DNA of 64,000 nucleotides, taken from assembly GCF_902459465.1 (NCBI RefSeq), contig NC_047063.1:10540001-10604000 (forward strand). The letters run 5' to 3'. Source of the stretch: Asterias rubens (taxonomy: Eukaryota). Of the stretch, positions 7,501-33,929 are shown piece by piece; the first letter of the stretch is position 1, and each line of letters begins with the position of its first letter. Made by a program: the position numbers and the translations under genes. The notes under the pieces were generated by a model that searched no databases, was not told where the DNA came from, and saw only the letters and a program-made list of their open reading frames with translations.

Positions 7501-8741
7501 ACGACGTGTGTAGCCAAAGTGTATGTTGTATAAGTGCACGTACCCCATGCACCAACAATGGAATGGGCACGTTGCCATTGCATCGGTCCAAAAGGACCCA
7601 TTAAGGGGAAACCCCTAGTTATGGTGTCATACCGCAATGTCAATTTTGCTTACACCGTCCTGTCAATAAGCCGGGACCAGGAGGAAACCGCATTGCCATG
7701 TCAGGCGTAAATGTAGAGTTCTACCATGATTTACTCCACGCTTATAGTATTTTGAACTTCCGACATTCAAGGCAGGGTACAGACCATGTGAACTTTGTTT
7801 ACAATAAGTGTGACCTTGTACATTCTTTCAGTATCCTGGCAGGCACAATACTATACTACACAGGTCCTATGGGAAGTTGACATTTTGTGTCACAATTTGC
7901 ACACAAATCAAAGAATTATTAAAGTAAAATCTGGACAAGTTTTGAGATGTGCCCCCTTTCATCATATCAAAAGAATTAGACAGAGCAATCTGCATAAAAT
8001 ATAAGATTTTATTATTTTTTCCATTAGGCTATGTACAAATCATGCCTGCGGGAAGTCCAGGCTCTGTGGCTCGTTTGTAAACATGTGATGTCACAGGTCA
8101 CACGTCTATACTTTTGGTAATATATTGTCAAAGACAAGTATTCTCACTGTTTTCCAGGCAGCATGCACAAAACAACAAATCTGTAATATTGAAGTTGGGC
8201 TCGAGTGGTCATCATCGGAAATTGCAAGAAAATAATGAAAGAAAAACACCCTTATAAGACACCCTTGCCGTATAAAACGGCTGTTGAGAAAGGTTTTTTG
8301 CCTGAAACATTTCTAAGATTAAATTTGTGGGTGAAATTATCTCTTGCTCTAAAAATCTATATTATGACTCGAAATATTATTAATCATATTAACATCTCTC
8401 CAGCGATCTCTAGTAAGTTGAAAAACAGAAAGTTAAATAATGAAATTAGAACTTCAATTTAGTGCTTACCTGACTACCAGCTCGTGGCCCCTCTCCGAAG
8501 CAGCGTGAAGCGGACCCGCACCCCACGCCGTATAAAAACCACAAACGCCCCGTCCCTTCCACAGCAGCAACCGCACCATCTCGTAGTTCCCGGTGACGCA
8601 CGCACAAAACAGGAGCGTCTCCTTAGTCTGGGGTGCCCTGTACGCAAGGAGCTGAGCAACTTCATCATCTGGTAACGTAGAGAACACCTTGCGGACGTAC
8701 TTGTGCTCACCTTTCTTAACTGCCGTTAATAGTTCTGACAT
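954..8741 (-). CDS. Ankyrin-repeat protein with Ser-rich linker and C-terminal coiled coil; complement(join(954..1573,2697..2920,8470..8741)), 371 aa
   Basis: Three ORF segments join through GT-AG introns with matching phases: AG|GTAAG at 8470, TTACAG|A at 2920, G|GTGAGT at 2697, TTACAG|AT at 1573. Total 1116 nt, in frame to TAA at 954-956. Ankyrin motifs ETLLFCAC, GPLHAASERGH, DTPLHLAAYRGH, KTALDDA. AATAAA on the minus strand at 155-160 and 164-169. Confidence 0.85.
2438..2678. repeat. Two-copy ~120-bp direct repeat in ankyrin intron 2
   Basis: TCTCTATGATCAGATTTACCCAA...CTGTGTCCGC occurs at about 2463 and 2583. Confidence 0.8.
2697..2920 (-). CDS. Ankyrin gene coding exon 2 (RLLLKHGADINVQTSYGDTPLHLAAYRGH...)
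   Basis: Textbook ankyrin repeats; pyrimidine-rich acceptor CTCCTGTCCATTACAG; donor G|GTGAGT. Confidence 0.92.
2965..3095 (-). mobile_element. tRNA-derived SINE
   Basis: A-box-like TGGTCTAGTTG (3089-3079) and B-box GGTTCGAATCC (3045-3035); a related copy lies at 35762-35880. Confidence 0.7.
3941..4014 (+). mobile_element. Degenerate tRNA-derived SINE head
   Basis: CATGGCCGAGTG A-box-like start and a decayed B-box about 60 nt later. Confidence 0.4.
8470..8741 (-). CDS. Ankyrin gene coding exon 1 (MSELLTAVKKG...ASERGHELVV)
   Basis: ATG at 8741-8739, ankyrin-like translation, donor AG|GTAAGC, ends in phase 2. Confidence 0.85.
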
Positions 8742-10579
8742 TTTAAATAGTCTTGGCGTGGCACCTGGAGATACTCGGTGTTTTACACAGCTTTCCAAAT
8801 TTACGCACCCGCAAGAGTTCGACTGGTGATGTCCGCACATGTTATAAGTTACACCACCATGCAGTCCCGATAACATTGCATTTCTTTATGTTTACAGATA
8901 GTTTCATTCACAAACCTCCCGCTCATAAACATCAACTCGTAGTGGCACTGAGTACAGCAGAGGGCCTTATACCTATGCCGTTGCAGTGACAAATAATACT
9001 TCCGGGTTTTCATAATGGTTCCGCTTGAGTCATGAACCCACACATTGCGTTTACTTGGTGCTTCTTGGAACCGCTATAGTGTGTATATGTATGGTGGATT
9101 GCAAGTAGGTGAAACCCCGAAAAGGAAGTTTATCACCAAAGGTACTATACGAGTGCGTTGTTGCGGCCGTTGCAATCACTTTTTGAGTTGTGGACAGTGG
9201 TAAACAAAAATATCAAGTTTAACCAAAACAGGTTCACGACCGTGAAAAACACACGGGGTCAAATATTGACAAGTTTGTTTTAAAGTTCCAACATATTGAT
9301 TGAATAGACTAATATCAACAAAATAGTGTGCAAAAACTGTACACAATATTTGTATGTACATGTACAATAACGATATTGGCGAAACATGTTTAAATTGATT
9401 TTGTGTTTGGTCCTGTAAGGGGGCGTGGCTAATACTTTATGGATTGTGGTGATTCTTAGCTTTTCACCACTTGATTATAATGTGCTGTTTTGCGAGTGAT
9501 GTTGTTTTCAGCTTTTGTCTTTTTTATATTTCTTGTTTTCTATTTAATTATTTCACGATTGTTATGCGCTTGTTTTAATATGGATTTGTGCAATATAAAT
9601 CATTTTTTAGACAGTTATTTCGTGGGTATGACAACATAATAATCAGCATAACCGCAGGGTTATGATTTTATTTTGTTTGAATTCGGACAAAAAAAACAAA
9701 GAAAGAATCTCGCCAAAAGACAAATATATTGAAGGAGCAAATAAAAAGTAATAAATTAGTCTGAAAGGTTTTTACAATGAAATAACATTTGCAGAAAATT
9801 ATAGGCTATCAAAGTTGAACCCTTGTATTTACGATAGAAGTTTTCCTCTGTACACAAGCATGGAATACAATTTCATAAACTTCCCCATCAGTAACAATGT
9901 TGCTAAGGCCTACATGATATTCATTATTTGAGGAAATTATTTCCAAACACCTGTTCCAACACCTGTCAACATCATGATCTGTTTCAAGAGTGTAGATGTC
10001 ACTGTTGTTTCCGTGTGTTTTGTGTATCGTCGATGTGTGTTATCTTGTCAATCTATGATGAGACTAATGACCTATGTGGATGGCAGTTTGGGGGAAACAC
10101 GTCAACGCTTTCGGCATTCTGTCGTTTCTAATGTGGCATTTTATACGCAGGGTCAAAACTCGGTTATACAATTTACGTAATGTCCACTCGATTTGCAGTA
10201 TCGTTGTCGGCGTGTAAATGGAATAGAATGGTCAGAGTGTAGTTTTTTTTTCTTTCTTTTTTGAAATCTTGAGACTTACACAATAGCTACAGGTTGTACA
10301 GGGGCTGTCAATGTTAAAACATGTATAAAAACTGCCATCAAAAGATGTGTAAAACCAGACCCCTGCCAACGATAACAATATAATTATACAACATAAAAAG
10401 GAGATTGCATGAAACATTTAAAAATCATACAAGAAATCATTAAAACACAAGCAAATCCAGATTATTGAAAGAAGAAAAAAATGAGAAAAAACTGCACCCA
10501 CAACAAAACACCGTGTAGCAATAGGAGGAAGGGACAACAATTTAAAAGCAAAAACCCTAGAATGGACTAAAAACCCCCA

Positions 10580-11460
10580 ACCCACAGAGCCATCCTTACG
10601 GGTACACAGTCGCTACAGTCCCCGGTCGCTACACATCGAGTTACGATGCAAAGTACCTTGGGCACGTTGCACCGATCTCGGTGTTTGATCCCTCGTCGTA
10701 CTTTCCTCAGTCCCATGCCCAGTCTACACCCATTAAGTACTCGTCGACCGATGGTCTGTTAGCAATAGCTCATAACTGATGCCTGAACAACAACGAACTT
10801 TAAATCTGAAATTTCCATCTTGCAATAGTAACTTATCAATCTACTCGTTTTGTATCCCTCAGTGATGTCCCATCCAAAGAATCTCCAAACATTTTCACGA
10901 AGAGTTTGTTTCATCAAATACTTTTTTTAGTTACACCTTAAAGGCACTGGACACTATTGGTTATTGTCAAAGACCAGTCTTTGCTCTTGGTGTATCTCAA
11001 CAAATGCATAAAATAACAAACCTGTAAAAAATTTGAGCTCAATTGGTCGTCGAAGTTGCGAGATAATTATGAAAGAATAAACACCCTTGTCACACGAAGT
11101 TGTGTGCGTTCAGATTGTTGATTTCGAGACCTCATCAAGTTCTAAATTTGAGGTCTCGAAATCAAATTAGTGGAAAATTACTTCTTTCTCGAGACCTGTG
11201 TCTCAGAGGGAGCCGTTTCTCACAATGTTTTATACCATCAACCTCTCCCCATTACTCACCAAGTAAGGTTTTATGCAAATAATTATTTTGGGTAATTACC
11301 AATAGTGTCCACTGCCTTTAATTGAGGATCAAACATTTTCTCATTTTTGAAGAAGTTTAATGTAAATTGAGACATGATTGGTACAAAATGTTGTTTTTTA
11401 CAAAAACATTCAAGTGGTTAACCACTCTTGAGGTATTTTTAAAGCAGCTTGCTAATAATT
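10580..11460 (+). pseudogene. Inverted partial duplicate of homeobox exon 3 (last ~65 codons) plus 3' UTR, interrupted by a MITE
   Basis: Aligns to the reverse complement of about 14609-15099. Two mismatches in the ~198 coding nt; no homeodomain, start codon or acceptor upstream. Confidence 0.9.
10938..11321 (+). mobile_element. Non-autonomous TTAA-flanked TIR element (Kolobok-like MITE), family A
   Basis: TTAA-AGGCACTGGACACTATTGG ... CCAATAGTGTCCACTGCCT-TTAA; the paralogous empty site at about 14737-14740 has a single TTAA. Confidence 0.85.
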
Positions 11461-13460: not shown

Positions 13461-14899
13461 ATATTGTGTCAGTTCTCACTTATAATTCCCAATCCTGTAT
13501 TATTACCTCAATTGTTTTCAAAATCCCTTTTGCCATCGCCAAGAAACTTTGAAGATAGAGGTTTGCGGTAAACACCATGTGAATATTTGACTAATAAGCA
13601 CTGACCATACTTGTCACACTTGTATGTTATAAGTGTACACAAAACTAGTTGAAGTTTGTATGATCTATAATCATAAGCTTCCTATTTCCAGGAACCATAG
13701 TTCAATATATTGTATTATTATTCATATGCGGAAATGATCAACACATTTTTACTTGTGTTTATCTTGTATGATTGTATTTATCTTACAATTTTATGCGGAT
13801 GCTGATCAAGTTATGGGGATGCCCCTACCGTCCACACAAAAAAACCGTTACAACCCTTCGTCAGCACAGCGACTGTTACATAACAGTACCCGTTTACTCA
13901 CTTTGGTTTGTTCTCAAATTTAATACTCGGGGTTGTTTTTTTGCTTAGTAACTCACTCTTATTCATTGCAATAATTATGATGTATTTCTTTTCATGTTTG
14001 CCTTATTCAGTGCCGATATAAAGTGATGTTGAGATAGGCCTACAACAATTTGGATAGGGCTGACCAGTTGTAACATAACTGTTTTACATTGAAATTCACT
14101 ATAATAAATTGAAACTACGGTCAAATCATCTACAGGTTGCTTCAATCGATTCGAACACATTTCAATGTTTAACTCTTATTAGTTTGCTTTGTGAGGCAGA
14201 CTGCGCGATTCCCAAAAGTGTTGTCATACTGTGGTATAGAGGGCGCTATAACAAACGTTGGTGCTGGGCTATTTTATCTGTTTAAAGTTACGAACTTGCA
14301 AAGGCATAAATTATCACCTAATCTATGAGCATTGAGTCGGCCACATATTTCATGTGCATGTAGGTTCAATAAATGTATTTATCCACTACGTTTTAATATC
14401 AAAACATTTATTAACTGCCCCAGTGTAGATACAACAGTCTTAAAAAAAAAATTGAAATATCCTTAGATGTGCGCAATAATTATTGAGGAAACAAACAAAC
14501 AAATAAATATACATGTACAACGTCCATTGATTTGCTTTTAAATATTTTAATAACTCTCTATGATAAACAAACAACGTTACAGTTGAACAATTTTAAGAAA
14601 AAAATCAAATTATTAAGCAAGCTGCTTTGAAAATACCTCCAGGGTGGTTAACCAATCTAAAAAACAACATTTTGTACAAATCATGTCTCAATTTACATTA
14701 AACTTCTTCAAAAATTAGAAAATGTTTGATCCTCAATTAATATGTAGTTAAAAAAGTATTTGTTGAAACAAACTCTTCGTGAACATGTTTGAAGATTCTT
14801 TGGAATGGGGACATCACTGAGGGATACAAAATGAGTAGATTGATGAGTTACTATTGCAAGATGGAAATTTCAGATTTAAAGTTCGTTGTTGTTCAGGCA

Positions 14900-15421
14900 T
14901 CAGTTATGAGCTATTGCTAACAGACCATCGGTCGACGAGTACTTAATGGGTGTAGACTGGGCATGGGACTGGGGAAAGTACGACGAGGGATCAAACACCG
15001 AGATCGGTGCAACGTGCCCAAGGTACTTTGCATCGTAACTCGATGTGTAGCGACCGGGGACTGTAGCGACTGTGTACCCGTAAGGAGGGCTCTGTGGGTG
15101 AGCACTGCTGCCGTAATTCAGCCCGTAGTACCCGTAGCTGTACGACGGCACCATGGTGTACTGATCGTAGGGGAGGGAGGAGAGCCCGTAGTAGGGAGAG
15201 GTAGCACTTGGTGAGCTGACGCCTGTTGTGAGATCGTCGGAGCCAACAGGGGATGCTGAGGTTGAAGGTGATAAGTGGTTAGTCTCGGATGGCTTGGGTG
15301 TTGTTGTTGGCGTTACCGCTGATTCATCACCATCCTCGCTGCTTGATGAATCGATCAGCTTCCCTGTGCTGTTAGGACGCCCATGACGACGGGTCCTAGC
15401 ACGGCGGTTCTGGAACCAAAC
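14900..15421 (-). CDS. Homeobox gene exon 3 (VWFQNRRAR... Ser/Pro/Tyr-rich C-terminus)
   Basis: Acceptor TTTTGTCTACCAG|GTTTGG, open to TGA at 14900-14902; minus-strand AATAAA at 14407-14412. Confidence 0.92.
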   Translation of the reverse strand, partial: VWFQNRRARTRRHGRPNSTGKLIDSSSSEDGDESAVTPTTTPKPSETNHLSPSTSASPVGSDDLTTGVSSPSATSPYYGLSSLPYDQYTMVPSYSYGYYGLNYGSSAHPQSPPYGYTVATVPGRYTSSYDAKYLGHVAPISVFDPSSYFPQSHAQSTPIKYSSTDGLLAIAHN

Positions 15422-17236
15422 CTGGTAGACAAAAATAGACAGAGACTTATTAAGCATGTTTACATTTACGTCTATATATAACAACAGCAGCTAATCCATT
15501 TAGCCGGAGGTGTGAGGTAGAACATTAGATGGATTAAAGGGTAATGAGAAAAATCAATTTGGCTGAACTGTGAGAGGTGTCACAGACGAGGAATATCGAC
15601 AGGATAACAAGATGTGCTAAATGTCTGCCATCGATTTAAGGCATTATAACCTCTGCTGATAATCGACCATTTTCTAAGTAACGATTATTCCAATCCAAAG
15701 TTAAACACTTTAAGCGGCAGACTTGTTTAATCCTTGATCTATAATAAACTGTCAGAAATGCTAGGGCTTGTTTTCATGGAATGAAAAACCGCAAGTACGA
15801 AGTACAAAATCAGATCTCATCGCGTCTGCCATGATTGGGAATTAAGGATAGAAAATAAGGTTTCGAGCAAATTTTGTTTTAGCGATTTGTTGCTTGGGAG
15901 AAGAACAAAAATCACAGGTGCGCATCAATCACTTTGGTTACAAGTTACTGACATTTAATTGAAAGAACACATTGGAGATGTGTATTTTTGAAGTAATGTT
16001 TGTACAGTATAACAGAGAAAGAGGGAATTTTTCACCCACAAATCTTCCTCTGACACAACCAATTAATTGTGCAACAAGAGTGTTTTCCCCTTTTCTTGCA
16101 ACTTCGATACCAGTAGATAGTGAGCCTAAGAATGTTCGTTTTTGTCTTGAATGTATCATCACTGAAGAATTCCTTGAGGTTAGGTTAAAAGGAATTTCTA
16201 AGATCTAGAATTTATAGATTTGTTAAATCTGAGGCGGTAAGTAAAGATTACAGACATGATATTTACCTGCACTCTTGCTTCAGACATACCGATAGATTCT
16301 GCAAGCACTTCCCTGCTGGTTATATCGGGGTACTGATCGTCAGTGAAGAACACTTCGAGCTGTTGCCGCTGGTCTTCAGTGAAGATGGTGCGGGCACGGC
16401 GACGGCGTTTCCTGAGCGGGCCGCTCCCGGTAGACTCGGCGGGGCAACTAACGATGTGAACGGCGGCCTGTTCAGCTGCTGAAAAGGATAAAGGTGATTT
16501 TTGTTAATGAAGTTATCGTCTGGCGGTTTATAAGGGCAGGTTGGGAAAAAACACCAGGGAAATATTACCCTTGTAAATGACGAGCGTTACATACATGATC
16601 CATGGTCAAAATCCAGTTTTAGCAAAGGGTCTTTAAACACCTGTATCTACTGCATGAAAGGGAAAAACATCACGGTTTGTAGTCTGAAAACTTACCGATT
16701 AAATGCAAGTTCATACGTTTTTATCGAAAAAGAAAACATTTGATCACATTTGATTACGACAACCATGGAGGTAGAAATAGACCCCAAATGGTACAGCCAC
16801 AAATTGATTAATGTTATCTAATACATGCTGGAAAATACGGTTATTAACTATTTTTTTCTTGAATCACACGACGGGTTTATTTATAAGTATCTTCTGTCTT
16901 GACTCTATCTATGATATATCCACTCAAATGAACCCAGCAGTGATGGTGAATATTGTGTCAGCTCACATGTATTACTACCTCATTTTGTTTTTAAAATCAA
17001 TGTTGCCCTCGCCAAGAACTGTGAAAATAGAATCCCACATTGCTTTCTCTTAAAGTGTTGCGTGGCTTCAATTTTCTTTTTATAAATTGATAAATTAGGC
17101 GCTTTGGGTTTAAAAACCAGGGTTAAACTGAATTACCTGTATTGGAATTCCCTGTCTTTATGCCAAGGATGTCTTCTATCAGATGACCAGCTTTCCTTTT
17201 CACAACGCAAGACTTGACTGATCGCGTGCTCTCCAT
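14900..17236 (-). CDS. PRD-class Q50 homeobox gene, Pmar1/Phb-like; complement(join(14900..15421,16267..16478,17137..17236)), 277 aa
   Basis: Spliced homeodomain RRRARTIFTEDQRQQLEVFFTDDQYPDITSREVLAESIGMSEARVQ|VWFQNRRARTRRH, with the intron at the PRD-typical position between residues 46 and 47. QYPDITxRE and NRRAR resemble echinoderm Pmar1/Phb as I recall them. All splice sites are canonical and in phase; 834 nt. Paralog identity is not determinable by eye. Confidence 0.88.
15492..15733. promoter_or_regulatory. Cluster of three TAATCC (K50 homeodomain/Otx-type) sites in intron 2
   Basis: TAATCC at 15492-15497, GGATTA at 15531-15536, TAATCC at 15728-15733. Motif match only. Confidence 0.4.
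16267..16478 (-). CDS. Homeobox gene exon 2 (homeodomain residues 1-46); absent from the ORF track because it has no start codon
   Basis: Manual translation of the reverse complement; acceptor CCTTTTCAG, donor CAG|GTAAAT. Confidence 0.92.
17137..17236 (-). CDS. Homeobox gene exon 1 (MESTRSVKSCVVKRKAGHLIEDILGIKTGNSNT) with eh1-like HLIEDIL
   Basis: ATG at 17236, donor G|GTAATT at 17137, phase 1 matches exon 2, about 100 nt downstream of a TATA/Inr. Confidence 0.75.
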
Positions 17237-17329
17237 GATACAGATTAATGTTATAAGAAGACCCGAATGCAACTGGTGGTAGTAGAAGAGCAAGTTGCGG
17301 AAGACTGTAGAGATGTAGAAACTCAATGA

Positions 17330-17470
17330 GTGAATGATACAGGCTGAGGACATGAGGCCGCTTTTATAACTACCCCTACCAGGTCAGCCGGGCCCTTTGA
17401 TTCATTCATGAGACCCCAAATAAGGTGCCGTCCTCGGTTGCTGATTGGTCGAGCGTAGTCTTTGAAGTCA
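17330..17470 (-). promoter_or_regulatory. Proximal promoter of the homeobox gene
   Basis: TATAAAA at 17368-17362, Inr-like TCATTC at 17337-17332 about 30 nt downstream, CCAAT at 17448-17444, TCF/LEF-type CTTTGAT at 17395-17401 and CTTTGAA at 17460-17466. Confidence 0.65.
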
Positions 17471-31467: not shown

Positions 31468-33185
31468 AATGATCAACGCAAGTATGAATGGATATGCCTG
31501 AATTAAGTTTGACTTTAAGGACTTGCTTTGTGAAAACTTTCAAAAACAATGTAGGTCATCTGTAACACAGAGGCATTCAGTAAAGTGTTCCTTCTGAGTG
31601 GGTTCGGAAGACAGTTCAAAACATCTTACCTCATCACCTTTAGTTTCTCATCACCACTGTGTCTGTTTTGGTGAAGTGGTCAACGTTTATGGCGTTATGC
31701 TAGATATAGACATCTATTTGTGGAACCCACATTTTGAAGACTTTGGTAAAGTGGGCAGCTAGATGTACTCATTTGATTGTGACATGACTACATTGAGTCT
31801 AAACTCGGATCTTGTAAATTCCTGTTCAAAACCGGAAAGGAGAAACATTGTGATTGCTTGATTTCTGTTGGTTCAGGTTACCACCAGTCTAGTGGTCAAT
31901 GCAAACATTGGGTGTGGTCAGTCGTGGTGGGCGGAGCCTATTTACCACTCCTCATTTGTCTTGTATTTTGAGAATTCTATAACTATCATCAGTCACAGAA
32001 CATTGTTAATTGTTCCTCTTTGTTAAACTGTAACTGTTTAAATGAAGCCACTACACAACTTTGTCATTGGTATTATCTCTAAACTTGACATCAGAATGGA
32101 GTTTGAGTTCTTATTTACATTTTAAGTATGATTGGCTGAAGCAGACTGATAGTGTCAACCTGTTACTTAGCAACGACTACGGATAAACAATACTACAGAT
32201 AAAAAATAAATTAGCAAACTTGTATAAAATGCATCTTGTTCTAATCGTTGCTGATAAATATATTTTTAAAAATAAATTAATCATTATAGCCCTTTTATAA
32301 TAGGCAACTCTTCTTGTAAGCTGAGGTGACATGACGTTTTTACGCACTGAGAACATCTATCATTCAATGATCTGCCACCTTTTGCCTAAGTGAGGAGCTA
32401 TTTTGAGGGTGTGATTTCATGTGGAGGGGGCCTACTATTACACATGAACTTTAAGCCATTGTTAAAGTTGCACTGATCTCTCATTAATGAAACTTCATCA
32501 GTTTTCAAAGGTCATAAAATTACCATCTTATATTTGATTGCAGGGTCGTGGCCGTCTGCTAAAGGCCCTCAGCCCTGCTCGATTTAAACGGCTGTTTAAG
32601 AACTCGTCACTATCCTTTTATACCCTTAGTATTAAACCAACATAATTTGATTCTTGACGACTCTAAGAATTTTTTCAGCTTCCCAGAGACAAGGCCTTTC
32701 AAAAGGTGATGCTTCCAATCATTTATTCCCTTATTATTGAACCAACATAATTGGAAACTTGATGACTCTAATAGTTTATTCAGCTTTCCAGAGACAAGGC
32801 TGCTCAATAAGTATTGCTTAGCAACAACTTAATAAACAAAGCCTATGATAAATCCAAAGCTCAGTCAATTATTAAATGGTGTCATAATGCTCAAACTGAA
32901 AATGGAAATTACCAATAAAAACTGTATACGGGCATAGTAGCTCCTATCTAGCCACCATTTATAAGATGCACCTTGGCGCCTAACAGTTTCATTTGCAGTG
33001 AAGTCAATGGTTGATTCAACTGCCATATAGCGATCTATCCAGCACACAGTTTTCAAATGTGACTAGACATCTTGAGCTAAAATTCAGGCTGAACTTTGAT
33101 TCAATCCAAGATCGTAGGAACAAGGGCTTCTGACTTTTCATTTATTTGCGCAGGAGTTGGGTCAACGGCTATTATAATTACCAGT

Positions 33186-33929
33186 ATGTTGGTATTTACA
33201 GGTTGCAAGAACAAATCTTTATGTTTACTTGTCGCTGTTTTCTTTGTGAGGATGCGGGCCTTGTGTCCTCCCGGCTGGGTTACTTGGCAAGACTCCTGCT
33301 ACATCTTACTGCCTGAGAAGATGAATTGGACCAATGCGTTCAGTGTTTGCGATCGTCCTGGAAGCGCCATGGCTATACCTGAATCTCAAAAGGAACAAGA
33401 TTTTATTTGGCTAGAAATGAAAACACAGGCGATACAAAATGGTCTGATTGAAGAAGATGAAAACTGTCTTTGGATTGGGTGTAAGAAAGATCTGATGAAT
33501 CCTGGACAACTGTCATGTCCTGGTAAGAAAGTTGATTCCAACTACACTAATTGGCGGAAAAACACTTATCGCCATGAGGGCCAGGACTGCATCATAATGC
33601 AATCAAACCACAAAGGTAAATGGGGAGATGGTACCTGTAAACATACCGTTTTCGCTGCTTGTGAGATGCGCGTCCCTCCTCCCATGTACTGTCTGACAGC
33701 TGACGTTGACGGTCGCTTCACACCGCAGTGTCTGCTGAACCATGACATCAAGAACCTGACAACCAAGGGAGTCATTGGGTGTGGTCAGGCGTGCTGGGCG
33801 GAGCCTCGATGCCACTCCTTCAATCTTTGGCAGCAGGGTAAGAAATGTCAGCTTAATGACGCATCCCGCCTGGAGGCTGACGTCACTGATTTCAAGAACA
33901 TGAAGGGCTGCTCCTTCTTTGAACTATAA
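33186..33929 (+). CDS. Secreted C-type lectin domain + PAN/apple-like domain protein, 247 aa, uninterrupted CDS
   Basis: Hydrophobic leader MLVFTGCKNKSLCLLVAVFFVRMRA; CTLD hallmarks CPPGW...SCY, WIG, C..W..C..AACE; PAN-like CGQACWAEPRCHSFNL...CQLN. CTGAC branch point at 33130, pyrimidine tract and CAG at 33151-33153 suggest a 5' UTR intron, so ATG 33186 is the likely start. Confidence 0.88.
   Translation: MLVFTGCKNKSLCLLVAVFFVRMRALCPPGWVTWQDSCYILLPEKMNWTNAFSVCDRPGSAMAIPESQKEQDFIWLEMKTQAIQNGLIEEDENCLWIGCKKDLMNPGQLSCPGKKVDSNYTNWRKNTYRHEGQDCIIMQSNHKGKWGDGTCKHTVFAACEMRVPPPMYCLTADVDGRFTPQCLLNHDIKNLTTKGVIGCGQACWAEPRCHSFNLWQQGKKCQLNDASRLEADVTDFKNMKGCSFFEL

What the first reader, a model, noticed from the sequence alone, without database searches (positions are those of the whole stretch)
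14900..17236. Pmar1/Phb-like PRD homeobox repressor with an N-terminal eh1-like motif
Seen: Q50 homeodomain with QYPDITSRE and NRRARTRR, and HLIEDIL in exon 1 (17165-17185). Known: eh1 (FxIxxIL) recruits Groucho, and Pmar1/micro1 and Phb genes are fast-evolving echinoderm repressors acting in early endomesoderm specification. Inference: this is a Phb-family member with a non-canonical eh1 (His in place of the leading Phe). Exon 2 is invisible to simple ORF calling, so the gene may be mis-annotated.
Basis: partly seen in the sequence, partly recalled or inferred. Interest (0 to 1): 0.7.

Follow-up and report, generated by a model that had tools for sequence, protein, structure and literature searches.

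The report
Sea-star PhbA-type paired-like homeobox gene

Summary
A minus-strand gene with three exons (17236-17137, 16478-16267, 15421-14900) encodes a 277-aa protein. It has a Q50 paired-like homeodomain and an N-terminal HLIEDILG motif at 17185-17162. A spliced contig from a public run of a closely related species joins the exons at exactly these boundaries.

The Phb reading is supported. The Patiria miniata ortholog shares a 90% cluster with GenBank BBK09441.1, named 'Pmar1/Phb1 related' (288/295 identical). The published Patiria pectinifera phbA qPCR primer hits that gene with one mismatch. In a homeodomain tree the window gene sits in a well-supported asteroid clade with it. That clade lies inside a weaker group holding urchin, holothurian, crinoid, ophiuroid and hemichordate relatives, away from Alx, Arx, Shox, Rx, Otp and Otx.

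His at the first eh1 position is within the documented F/Y/H range. The sister species already has this same gene model annotated.

Groucho-dependent repression and a role in early endomesoderm are inferred from Patiria and sea-urchin work. They were not tested here, and Pmar1 sequences could not be fetched for the tree.

Verdict: a new member of a known kind, of modest interest. The scan has a separate note on the inverted duplicate of this gene's 3' end.

The parts
17440..17450 (-). CCAAT-box-like block GACCAATCAGC in the proximal promoter
   Evidence: Conserved with the Patiria miniata ortholog's upstream region (GGCCAATCAGC) in the pairwise alignment. Its function is inferred.
17395..17408 (-). 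Conserved promoter block TGAATGAATCAAAG, which holds a TCF/LEF-like ATCAAAG core
   Evidence: 13 of 13 bases TGAATGAATCAAA are identical in Patiria at the same distance from the TATA box. Other WWCAAAG-like motifs lie nearby in Asterias, Patiria and Amphiura. Binding was not tested.
17362..17368 (-). TATA box (TATAAAA)
   Evidence: Read from the sequence. Patiria has TATATAA at the aligned place. The RNA-derived contig reaches 17307, downstream of it.
17237..17307 (-). 5' UTR (minimum extent)
   Evidence: Spliced contig record 4 of run X1 covers 17137-17307.
17137..17236 (-). Exon 1 coding part: Met1 to the first base of codon 34
   Evidence: ATG at 17236 and a GT donor after 17137. The joint 16478|17137 is seen in a spliced contig.
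17162..17185 (-). EH1/octapeptide-like motif HLIEDILG (residues 18-25)
   Evidence: It is conserved as HLIADILG in Patiria, HLIKDILG in Acanthaster and FSIDGILG/FSIERILG in Amphiura. It lies in a region predicted to be disordered.
16479..17136 (-). Intron 1 (658 nt, GT..AG)
   Evidence: One search reports a joint that skips 658 bases, with ends CT..AC on the + strand.
16267..16478 (-). Exon 2: linker plus homeodomain positions 1-46. It has a tandem NAGNAG acceptor at 16478/16475
   Evidence: The two A. amurensis isoforms differ by one Ala exactly here. The X1 contig uses 16478.
15422..16266 (-). Intron 2 (845 nt, GT..AG) at homeodomain position 46/47
   Evidence: One search reports a joint that skips 845 bases. 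The same exon layout is found in the Patiria and Amphiura relatives.
14900..15421 (-). Exon 3 coding part: homeodomain positions 47-60, a Ser/Thr/Pro-rich linker, a Tyr-rich conserved tail and the stop codon at 14902-14900
15047..15091 (-). Asteroid-conserved C-terminal motif SPPYGYTVATVPGRY (residues 215-229)
   Evidence: Alignments, coordinates. Function unknown.
14909..14926 (-). Extreme C-terminal motif GLLAIA (residues 270-275), invariant in four asteroid species
   Evidence: Function unknown.
14701..14899 (-). 3' UTR (minimum extent)
   Evidence: Contig record 1 of run X1 covers 14701-15175 without a break.

Best explanation
The locus is the single-copy Asterias ortholog of starfish phbA, a member of the ambulacrarian Phb/Pmar1 group of paired-like (Q50) homeobox genes.

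Shown here: the gene is intact, has three exons, is spliced and transcribed in the sister species, and changes mostly at synonymous sites between the two Asterias species.

Shown here: the protein consists of a disordered N-terminus carrying one conserved EH1/octapeptide-type motif, a well-folded homeodomain with all the canonical DNA-contact residues (R5, W48, F49, Q50, N51, R53), and a disordered tail with short motifs conserved among asteroids.

Inferred: the homeodomain binds TAAT-type paired-like sites and the EH1 motif docks on the WD40 domain of Groucho/TLE, so the protein acts as a transcriptional repressor.

Inferred from Patiria pectinifera PhbA/PhbB and urchin Pmar1: it is expressed zygotically around blastula stage and promotes endomesoderm gene activation indirectly, by repressing another repressor.
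For: Gene model and transcription. Single copy. A 96%-identical Asterias amurensis protein and full-length Patiria and Acanthaster orthologs.

Name link: P0360 = BBK09441.1, 'Pmar1/Phb1 related', shares a 90% cluster with the Patiria miniata ortholog and is 288/295 identical to it. The Pp-phbA qPCR forward primer from PMC8505446 matches that gene at 19 of 20 bases, against 0 matches expected by chance. The reverse primer's 5' half ends at the exon 2 donor, which is what an exon-spanning primer would show.

Tree: the asteroid clade is supported at 99/98 and 99/84, and is sister to Amphiura at 90/77.

The three-exon layout is shared with Patiria and Amphiura. The profile search recovers relatives in every species listed for the published pmar1/phb tree of PMC11310086 that I could check: P. 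flava, S. kowalevskii, A. japonica, S. purpuratus, A. japonicus, A. planci and A. filiformis.

Selection: 7 synonymous against 3 non-synonymous codon changes versus the sister-species contig, and none of the non-synonymous ones fall in exons 1-2.

Fold: only residues 68-117 are confident, as three helices.

Biology of the family: PMC8505446 (phbA and phbB peak at mid-blastula and act upstream in endomesoderm specification), PMC7719182 and PMC4709884. EH1 binds Groucho, and F, Y or H is accepted at the first position: PMC4901127 and PMC1310626.
Against: No Pmar1 or named Sp-Phb1 sequence could be put in the tree. The link to Pmar1 therefore rests on the GenBank name, on the literature and on the Patiria ortholog.

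The wider ambulacrarian grouping is weak (94/76, and it also takes in spiralian sequences; the AU test only fails to reject an ambulacrarian clade, p=0.49).

Only one EH1-like motif is present, whereas urchin Pmar1 is reported to need two (PMC4709884). The brittle-star relative Pplx lacks EH1 and does not repress, so function in this family is labile.

Stage and tissue of expression are unknown. Six other RNA-like runs of the two Asterias species hold next to none of the sequence. That fits a narrow expression window but does not prove one.
Confidence: 0.8

Rival explanations
1. It belongs to the Phb family but does not work as a Groucho-dependent repressor. The HLIEDILG motif would then be a conserved linear motif with another partner, or the protein would act as an activator or a context-dependent factor.
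For: Afi-Pplx, a relative, lacks EH1 and does not repress in urchin embryos, and EH1 motifs are gained and lost easily (PMC4709884). Urchin and holothurian relatives found here show no such N-terminal motif. There is only one motif here, against two in Pmar1. The motif region has low model confidence.
Against: The motif fits the EH1 core (aromatic-x-I-x-x-I/L-L followed by G) and lies N-terminal to the homeodomain, as in other PRD-like repressors. It is kept over the whole asteroid clade, in Amphiura and in hemichordates. Starfish Phb proteins are reported to act through a repressor intermediate, as I recall the abstract of Yamazaki et al. 2020, which I could not read here.
Confidence: 0.15
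2. It is the echinoderm ortholog of a classical bilaterian PRD-like family, and 'Phb' is just a local name. Candidates are Prop1, as NCBI's automatic names suggest, or Phox2, Prrx, Arx or Alx.
For: NCBI calls the Patiria and Acanthaster orthologs 'prophet of Pit-1-like'. Teleost PROP1 is the nearest classical family in the rooted tree (84/86). The best single-sequence hits outside echinoderms are Prrx2 and Phox2b.
Against: Teleost PROP1's best match in this genome is on another chromosome (C1:5066353, 64% identity), and this gene is not among its 23 hits. No OAR motif is found. The homeodomain has R55 (WFQNRRAR) and an RRRxRT start, shared with the Phb group and not with the K55 families. Those similarities are confined to the homeodomain (17-50% of the query covered). 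Automatic names in this family are plainly erratic: ceh-36, ALX1-like, Dmbx-like, MIXL1-like, OTX1-like, aristaless.
Confidence: 0.04
3. It is a decaying or non-functional copy.
For: The homeodomain is unusually divergent for a PRD-like gene: 46/60 identical between Asterias and Patiria, on a long terminal branch. A partial inverted copy of the 3' end lies 3.9 kb away.
Against: The 277-codon frame is open across three exons, and the splice sites are canonical and used. The N-terminus and homeodomain are 100% identical to A. amurensis, with only synonymous changes there. All the structural and DNA-contact residues of the homeodomain are intact, and it folds confidently.
Confidence: 0.01

Closest known systems
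Patiria pectinifera PhbA (GenBank BBK09441.1, 'paired-like class homeodomain transcription factor Pmar1/Phb1 related'; Yamazaki et al. 2020, as cited in PMC8505446 and PMC7719182)
   Same: It is the ortholog by tree (99/98) and by full-length alignment. It has the same three-exon layout, the same N-terminal A-G-H-L-I-x-D-I-L-G motif, the same RRHGR after the homeodomain, and the same C-terminal SPPxGYTVAT(V/L)PGRY and GLLAIA motifs. The proximal promoter blocks are conserved.
   Different: Only 46/60 homeodomain identities and about 33% identity in the tail. Asterias has lost the C-S-P-P segment that Patiria shares with ophiuroids and holothurians (CCSPP-type). Function was tested in Patiria, not in Asterias.
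Euechinoid Pmar1/Micro1
   Same: According to the literature it is the same paired-like group. It is a small protein that acts as an EH1-dependent repressor at the top of the endomesoderm/micromere network (PMC7719182, PMC4709884).
   Different: Pmar1 occurs in tandem arrays, is reported to have two EH1 motifs and represses hesC. This gene is single-copy with one EH1-like motif, and starfish Phb does not act through HesC. No Pmar1 sequence was available here for direct comparison.
Amphiura filiformis phb paralogs and Pplx
   Same: These are the nearest non-asteroid relatives in the tree (P0005 and P0016, 90/77). They have a canonical FSI(D/E)xILG motif, the same exon layout and a tyrosine-rich tail.
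   Different: Amphiura has 13 phb genes (PMC11310086). Pplx has H50 and no EH1 (PMC4709884). Asterias has this gene plus one divergent PhbB-like paralog.
Hesx1, Goosecoid and other PRD-like repressors with an EH1/octapeptide motif
   Same: They work the same way in outline: an N-terminal EH1 motif, a paired-like homeodomain and Groucho/TLE recruitment (PMC4901127, PMC1310626).
   Different: They are different homeodomain families. There is no orthology, and they were not in the tree.

Membership tests
Phb/Pmar1 paired-like homeobox group (Ambulacraria) | Paired-like homeodomain with Q50, no PAIRED domain and no OAR motif | tested here: met
   Pfam finds only Homeodomain in exons 2 and 3 and nothing else at E<=1. 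Q50 and the intron at position 46/47 are seen.
Phb/Pmar1 paired-like homeobox group (Ambulacraria) | The homeodomain groups with named family members in a phylogeny | tested here: met
   It forms a well-supported clade (99/98) with the Patiria miniata protein that is 288/295 identical to BBK09441.1, 'Pmar1/Phb1 related'. Caveat: Pmar1 and a named Sp-Phb1 were not available, and the deeper node is only 94/76.
Phb/Pmar1 paired-like homeobox group (Ambulacraria) | Identity of the reference gene as phbA | tested here: met
   The published Pp-phbA-qF primer (PMC8505446) matches the P. miniata ortholog's exon 2 at 19/20 bases, with a chance expectation of 0.00.
Phb/Pmar1 paired-like homeobox group (Ambulacraria) | EH1 repressor motif(s) | tested here: met
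   One N-terminal motif, HLIEDILG, is present and conserved. A second, C-terminal motif as reported for Pmar1 was not seen in the protein (no separate scan was run).
Phb/Pmar1 paired-like homeobox group (Ambulacraria) | Transient zygotic expression in cleavage or blastula, at the vegetal side | not testable with these tools
   All that is shown is that a spliced transcript exists in one run of the sister species. The run's tissue and stage are coded. Other RNA-like runs lack it.
Phb/Pmar1 paired-like homeobox group (Ambulacraria) | Repressor activity that promotes endomesoderm genes | not testable with these tools
   This needs embryo injection or reporter assays.
EH1/octapeptide Groucho-binding motif | Core of aromatic (F/Y/H)-x-I-x-x-(I/L)-L, N-terminal to the homeodomain and conserved among orthologs | tested here: met
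   H-L-I-E-D-I-L-G at residues 18-25. F/Y/H at the first position is documented in PMC4901127, and FHYW in PMC1310626. Conservation is shown.
EH1/octapeptide Groucho-binding motif | Physical binding to the Groucho/TLE WD40 domain | not tested
   No complex prediction was run. The Asterias Groucho is a multi-exon gene with no single reference, and the tool's Swiss-Prot references cover microbes and phages only.
Prop (PROP1) family | Reciprocal best similarity with vertebrate PROP1 | tested here: not met
   Teleost PROP1's best hit in this genome is C1:5066353, and the window gene is absent from its hit list.
Alx/Arx/Rx/Shox/Otp/Drgx (OAR-bearing PRD-like families) | Grouping by homeodomain, K55 and a C-terminal OAR motif | tested here: not met
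   The tree separates them. The residue at position 55 is R, not K. No OAR motif is found.

The most novel reading that the evidence does not exclude
The 13-nt promoter block TGAATGAATCAAA(G), which sits about 30 nt upstream of the TATA box and is identical in Asterias and Patiria, may be a TCF/beta-catenin response element, along with the further WWCAAAG-like motifs nearby in Asterias, Patiria and Amphiura. If so, the maternal beta-catenin to pmar1 input that starts the sea-urchin vegetal network would be inherited from an ancestral beta-catenin to phb link rather than invented with pmar1. A second, weaker possibility is that the family is older than Ambulacraria. Spiralian proteins (Haliotis, Lingula, Owenia) with an HSIxxIL motif fall in the same weakly supported group, and the Haliotis protein's best match in this genome is this gene.
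Probability: 0.2. Interest if true: 0.55.

Novelty: new member of a known kind. Interest (0 to 1): 0.3.

Why it matters
Phb/Pmar1 genes are a textbook case of how the earliest steps of an embryonic gene network get rewired. Tying an 'uncharacterized protein' locus in Asterias to starfish phbA does three useful things. It adds a second asteroid order, Forcipulatida, to a family studied only in Patiria. It shows which parts are constrained over that distance: the EH1-type motif, the homeodomain, two tail motifs and a short promoter module. And it gives exact coordinates for probes, morpholinos and reporter constructs. It does not change the current picture of the family.

Tried and rejected
- The key paper (Yamazaki et al. 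2020, Development) is not held. What I say about it comes from papers that cite it and from my memory of its abstract.
- No Pmar1/Micro1 or explicitly named Sp-Phb1 sequence could be fetched. They did not appear among the best 120 or 150 hits, and searches for 'Sp-Phb1' and for accession numbers found nothing. S. purpuratus XP_783180.1 / XP_003730812.1 (P0127) is probably Phb1, but that is unproven.
- The Pp-phbA reverse primer did not match Patiria genomic DNA. It spans the intron at homeodomain position 46/47: its first 7 bases end exactly at the exon 2 donor, but the exon 3 half differs between the two Patiria species.
- The peptides encoded by the phbB primers are absent from the Acanthaster PhbB-like protein. 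The PhbB label for the C20 paralog is therefore only a guess.
- Tandem-array check in Amphiura: P0005 has no locus on record, and there is no second copy within 10 kb either side of P0016.
- Prop1 orthology is rejected. No OAR motif was found.
- My first tree had one hand-entered row shifted by one residue. It was corrected and the tree rebuilt; the placement of the window gene did not change.
- The structure model adds only that the regions outside the homeodomain are disordered. No fold search was warranted.
- Complex prediction was not used, because no usable Groucho chain was available.
- RNA-like runs of the window's own species held none of the sequence, so expression is shown only in the sister species.
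Full report
**What is there.** On the minus strand of the window a gene runs from a TATA box at 17368-17362 to at least 14701. By eye it has three coding exons: 17236-17137, 16478-16267 and 15421-14900. The introns have GT..AG ends, and the 834-nt frame is open and encodes 277 residues.

HLIEDIL is at 17185-17165, QYPDITSRE at 16335-16309 and NRRARTRR at 15409-15386. Pfam recognises a homeodomain that begins in exon 2 (E=5.3e-12) and ends in exon 3. The split falls at homeodomain position 46/47, the usual paired-class intron. Position 50 is Gln. There is no PAIRED domain and no OAR motif.

**Independent support for the gene model.** I laid contigs of public runs on 14700-17400. Run X1 comes from a closely related species, with pieces about 97% alike. 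It holds a 618-nt contig that joins 15421 to 16267 and 16478 to 17137. It skips exactly the 845-nt and 658-nt introns I had predicted, and it extends to 17307. A second contig covers 14701-15175.

A contig that lacks both introns must derive from spliced RNA, so the gene is transcribed and the model is right. Compared with that contig, the coding sequence shows 7 synonymous and 3 non-synonymous codon changes, and none of the non-synonymous ones fall in exons 1-2. That is the signature of purifying selection.

Six other RNA-like runs of the two species hold next to none of the sequence. This fits narrow expression but proves nothing.

**Genome context.** The assembly is 417.6 Mb and the window is C2:10540001-10604000. 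The closest protein in the public collections is from Asterias amurensis: 96% identical over exon 3 and 100% over the N-terminus and homeodomain. The window is therefore from Asterias or a very near relative.

The homeodomain exon occurs once in the genome. The next-best match is 45% identical, on C20.

**Relatives and family.** Full-length relatives are confined to sea stars: Patiria miniata XP_038069357.1 (295 aa) and Acanthaster planci XP_022081433.1 (303 aa). NCBI auto-names both 'prophet of Pit-1-like'.

Three results tie these to the described Phb family.
- The 90% cluster of the P. miniata protein contains BBK09441.1, deposited as 'paired-like class homeodomain transcription factor Pmar1/Phb1 related [Patiria ...]'. 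It is 288/295 identical.
- The Pp-phbA forward qPCR primer printed in PMC8505446 encodes T-A-E-Q-R-H-Q. It matches the P. miniata gene at 19 of 20 bases, inside the homeodomain exon, with 0 matches expected by chance.
- A profile built from the echinoderm hits recovers relatives in P. flava, S. kowalevskii, Anneissia japonica, S. purpuratus, Apostichopus japonicus, A. planci and A. filiformis. These are the species listed for the published pmar1/phb tree in PMC11310086.

**Phylogeny.** I built a 60-column homeodomain tree of 60 rows (IQ-TREE, LG+C20 PMSF). The window gene falls with A. amurensis and Patiria PhbA (99/84) and with A. planci (99/98). This clade is sister to two Amphiura proteins (90/77).

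All of this lies inside a weaker group (94/76). That group also holds the urchin, holothurian, crinoid and hemichordate relatives, the PhbB-like pair and some spiralian sequences. Rows labelled Alx, Arx, Shox, Rx, Drgx, Otp, Otx, Prrx and Phox2 lie outside it.

An AU test does not reject an ambulacrarian-only clade (p=0.49), but that is not proof of one.

There are several caveats. The alignment has few columns. Automatic source names are often wrong: several rows labelled Unc4, Arx or Otp have Shox- or Drgx-type homeodomains. Families such as Hbn, Gsc, Pitx, Mix and Hesx were not sampled. Pmar1 itself could not be obtained.

The signature shared by the group is an RRRxRT start, YPDI, LA(D/E)(A/S)I and R55 (WFQNRRAR). 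The classical families have K55.

**Is it Prop1?** Teleost PROP1 is the nearest classical family in the rooted tree (84/86). But its best match in this genome is on C1, and the window gene is not among its 23 hits. I therefore reject simple Prop orthology.

A mollusc 'Prop1-like' protein (Haliotis) does hit this gene best. This leaves open that the family has spiralian relatives.

**The EH1-like motif.** HLIEDILG (residues 18-25) is kept as HLIADILG in both Patiria species and as HLIKDILG in Acanthaster. Amphiura has FSIDGILG and FSIERILG, Saccoglossus has HTIACIL and Ptychodera has FSIAEIL. The urchin and holothurian relatives show no such motif.

The reviews state that the first hydrophobic position of EH1/octapeptide is F, Y or H (PMC4901127), or FHYW (PMC1310626). 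His is therefore an ordinary, octapeptide-type variant, not a departure from the motif.

The AlphaFold model shows only the three homeodomain helices with confidence (residues 68-117, pLDDT about 95). The motif lies in a disordered arm, as expected for a short linear docking motif. Groucho binding itself was not tested.

**Rate of change.** Between two asteroid orders the homeodomain is only 46/60 identical, the N-terminus 24/53 and the tail about 51/156. The Asterias branch is long (0.42 changes per site). 'Fast-evolving' is fair.

The conserved islands in the tail are SPPxGY(T/A)VAT(V/L)PGRY, a short (V/I/M)FD motif and a C-terminal GLLAIA. The C-C-S-P-P segment shared by ophiuroids, holothurians and (as C-S-P-P) Patiria is gone in Asterias.

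**Mechanism.** Shown: an intact DNA-binding homeodomain with canonical contact residues, a conserved EH1-type motif, transcription and splicing, and purifying selection.

Inferred from family knowledge: the protein binds TAAT-type paired-like sites and recruits Groucho/TLE to repress targets. Inferred by analogy with Patiria PhbA/PhbB: these peak at mid-blastula and act upstream in endomesoderm specification (PMC8505446), and they feed positively into hesC indirectly (PMC7719182). By that analogy this protein would promote endomesoderm genes through a double-negative step.

I put about 0.9 on the family and orthology call, and about 0.55-0.6 on Groucho-dependent repression in early endomesoderm.

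**Novelty and verdict.** The gene is an unnamed member of a family already characterised in another sea star, and the same gene model already exists in the annotation of the sister species. It is a sound annotation result of modest interest.

The most interesting leftover is a short promoter module conserved between Asterias and Patiria. It consists of a CCAAT box, TGAATGAATCAAA(G) with a TCF-like core, and a TATA box. This hints at a shared upstream input, but it is untested.

Noticed in passing
window 10580-10871 vs 14808-15099; 11318-11400 vs 14658-14740: The last 200 nt of the coding sequence plus 3' UTR of the gene are repeated in inverted orientation about 3.9 kb downstream (292 nt at 99%, and 83 nt at 98%). 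The copy would encode the last 64 residues (97% identical to the A. amurensis protein) but has no homeobox. It could be a real partial duplication or an assembly artefact. It is already noted by the scan as s1-175492.
   Followed up: partly
window 16475-16478 (minus strand): There is a tandem NAGNAG acceptor (cagCAG) at the start of exon 2. The two annotated A. amurensis isoforms (273 and 272 aa) differ by one Ala exactly here. The spliced contig of run X1 uses the upstream site.
   Followed up: partly
window 17362-17450 (minus strand) and L027:9790-9960: The proximal promoter architecture is conserved between Asterias and Patiria miniata: a CCAAT box, a 13-nt identical block TGAATGAATCAAA with a TCF-like core, and a TATA box. 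Extra WWCAAAG-like motifs lie upstream in Asterias, Patiria and Amphiura.
   Followed up: partly
G000:C20:3261939-3263172 (minus strand; L028, L029): This is a second, divergent family member. It has two exons split at homeodomain position 46/47, R55 and an SCC motif in the tail. It is the ortholog of Acanthaster planci XP_022107915.1 ('MIXL1-like'). It may be the Asterias phbB, but the published phbB primers could not be matched to it.
   Followed up: partly
G000:C21:0.52-0.77 Mb; C7:16.58-16.73 Mb; C3:1.57-2.02 Mb; C10:14.44-14.57 Mb; C23:0.52-0.60 Mb: Several clusters of paired-like homeobox exons turned up in the own-genome searches, and some carry in-frame stops. They look like tandem arrays of PRD-like genes or pseudogenes. 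They were not identified.
   Followed up: no
window 33096-33929 (+) and 8466-8876 (-): Neighbouring open frames carry a C-type lectin plus PAN domain (E=4.6e-11 and 1.2e-6) and ankyrin repeats (E=1.4e-10). They are probably exons of unrelated flanking genes.
   Followed up: no
proteins P0242, P0351-P0353 (Saccoglossus kowalevskii): The hemichordate relatives form one 90% cluster of several accessions, at least some on one 10-kb scaffold. This suggests recent tandem duplication there as well. They carry a His-type motif, HTIACIL.
   Followed up: no
source names of family members: Automatic annotation gives members of this one family at least eight different names: prophet of Pit-1-like, ceh-36, ceh-37-like, ALX1-like, Dmbx1-A-like, MIXL1-like, OTX1 A-like and aristaless. 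Name-based surveys would miss the family.
   Followed up: no
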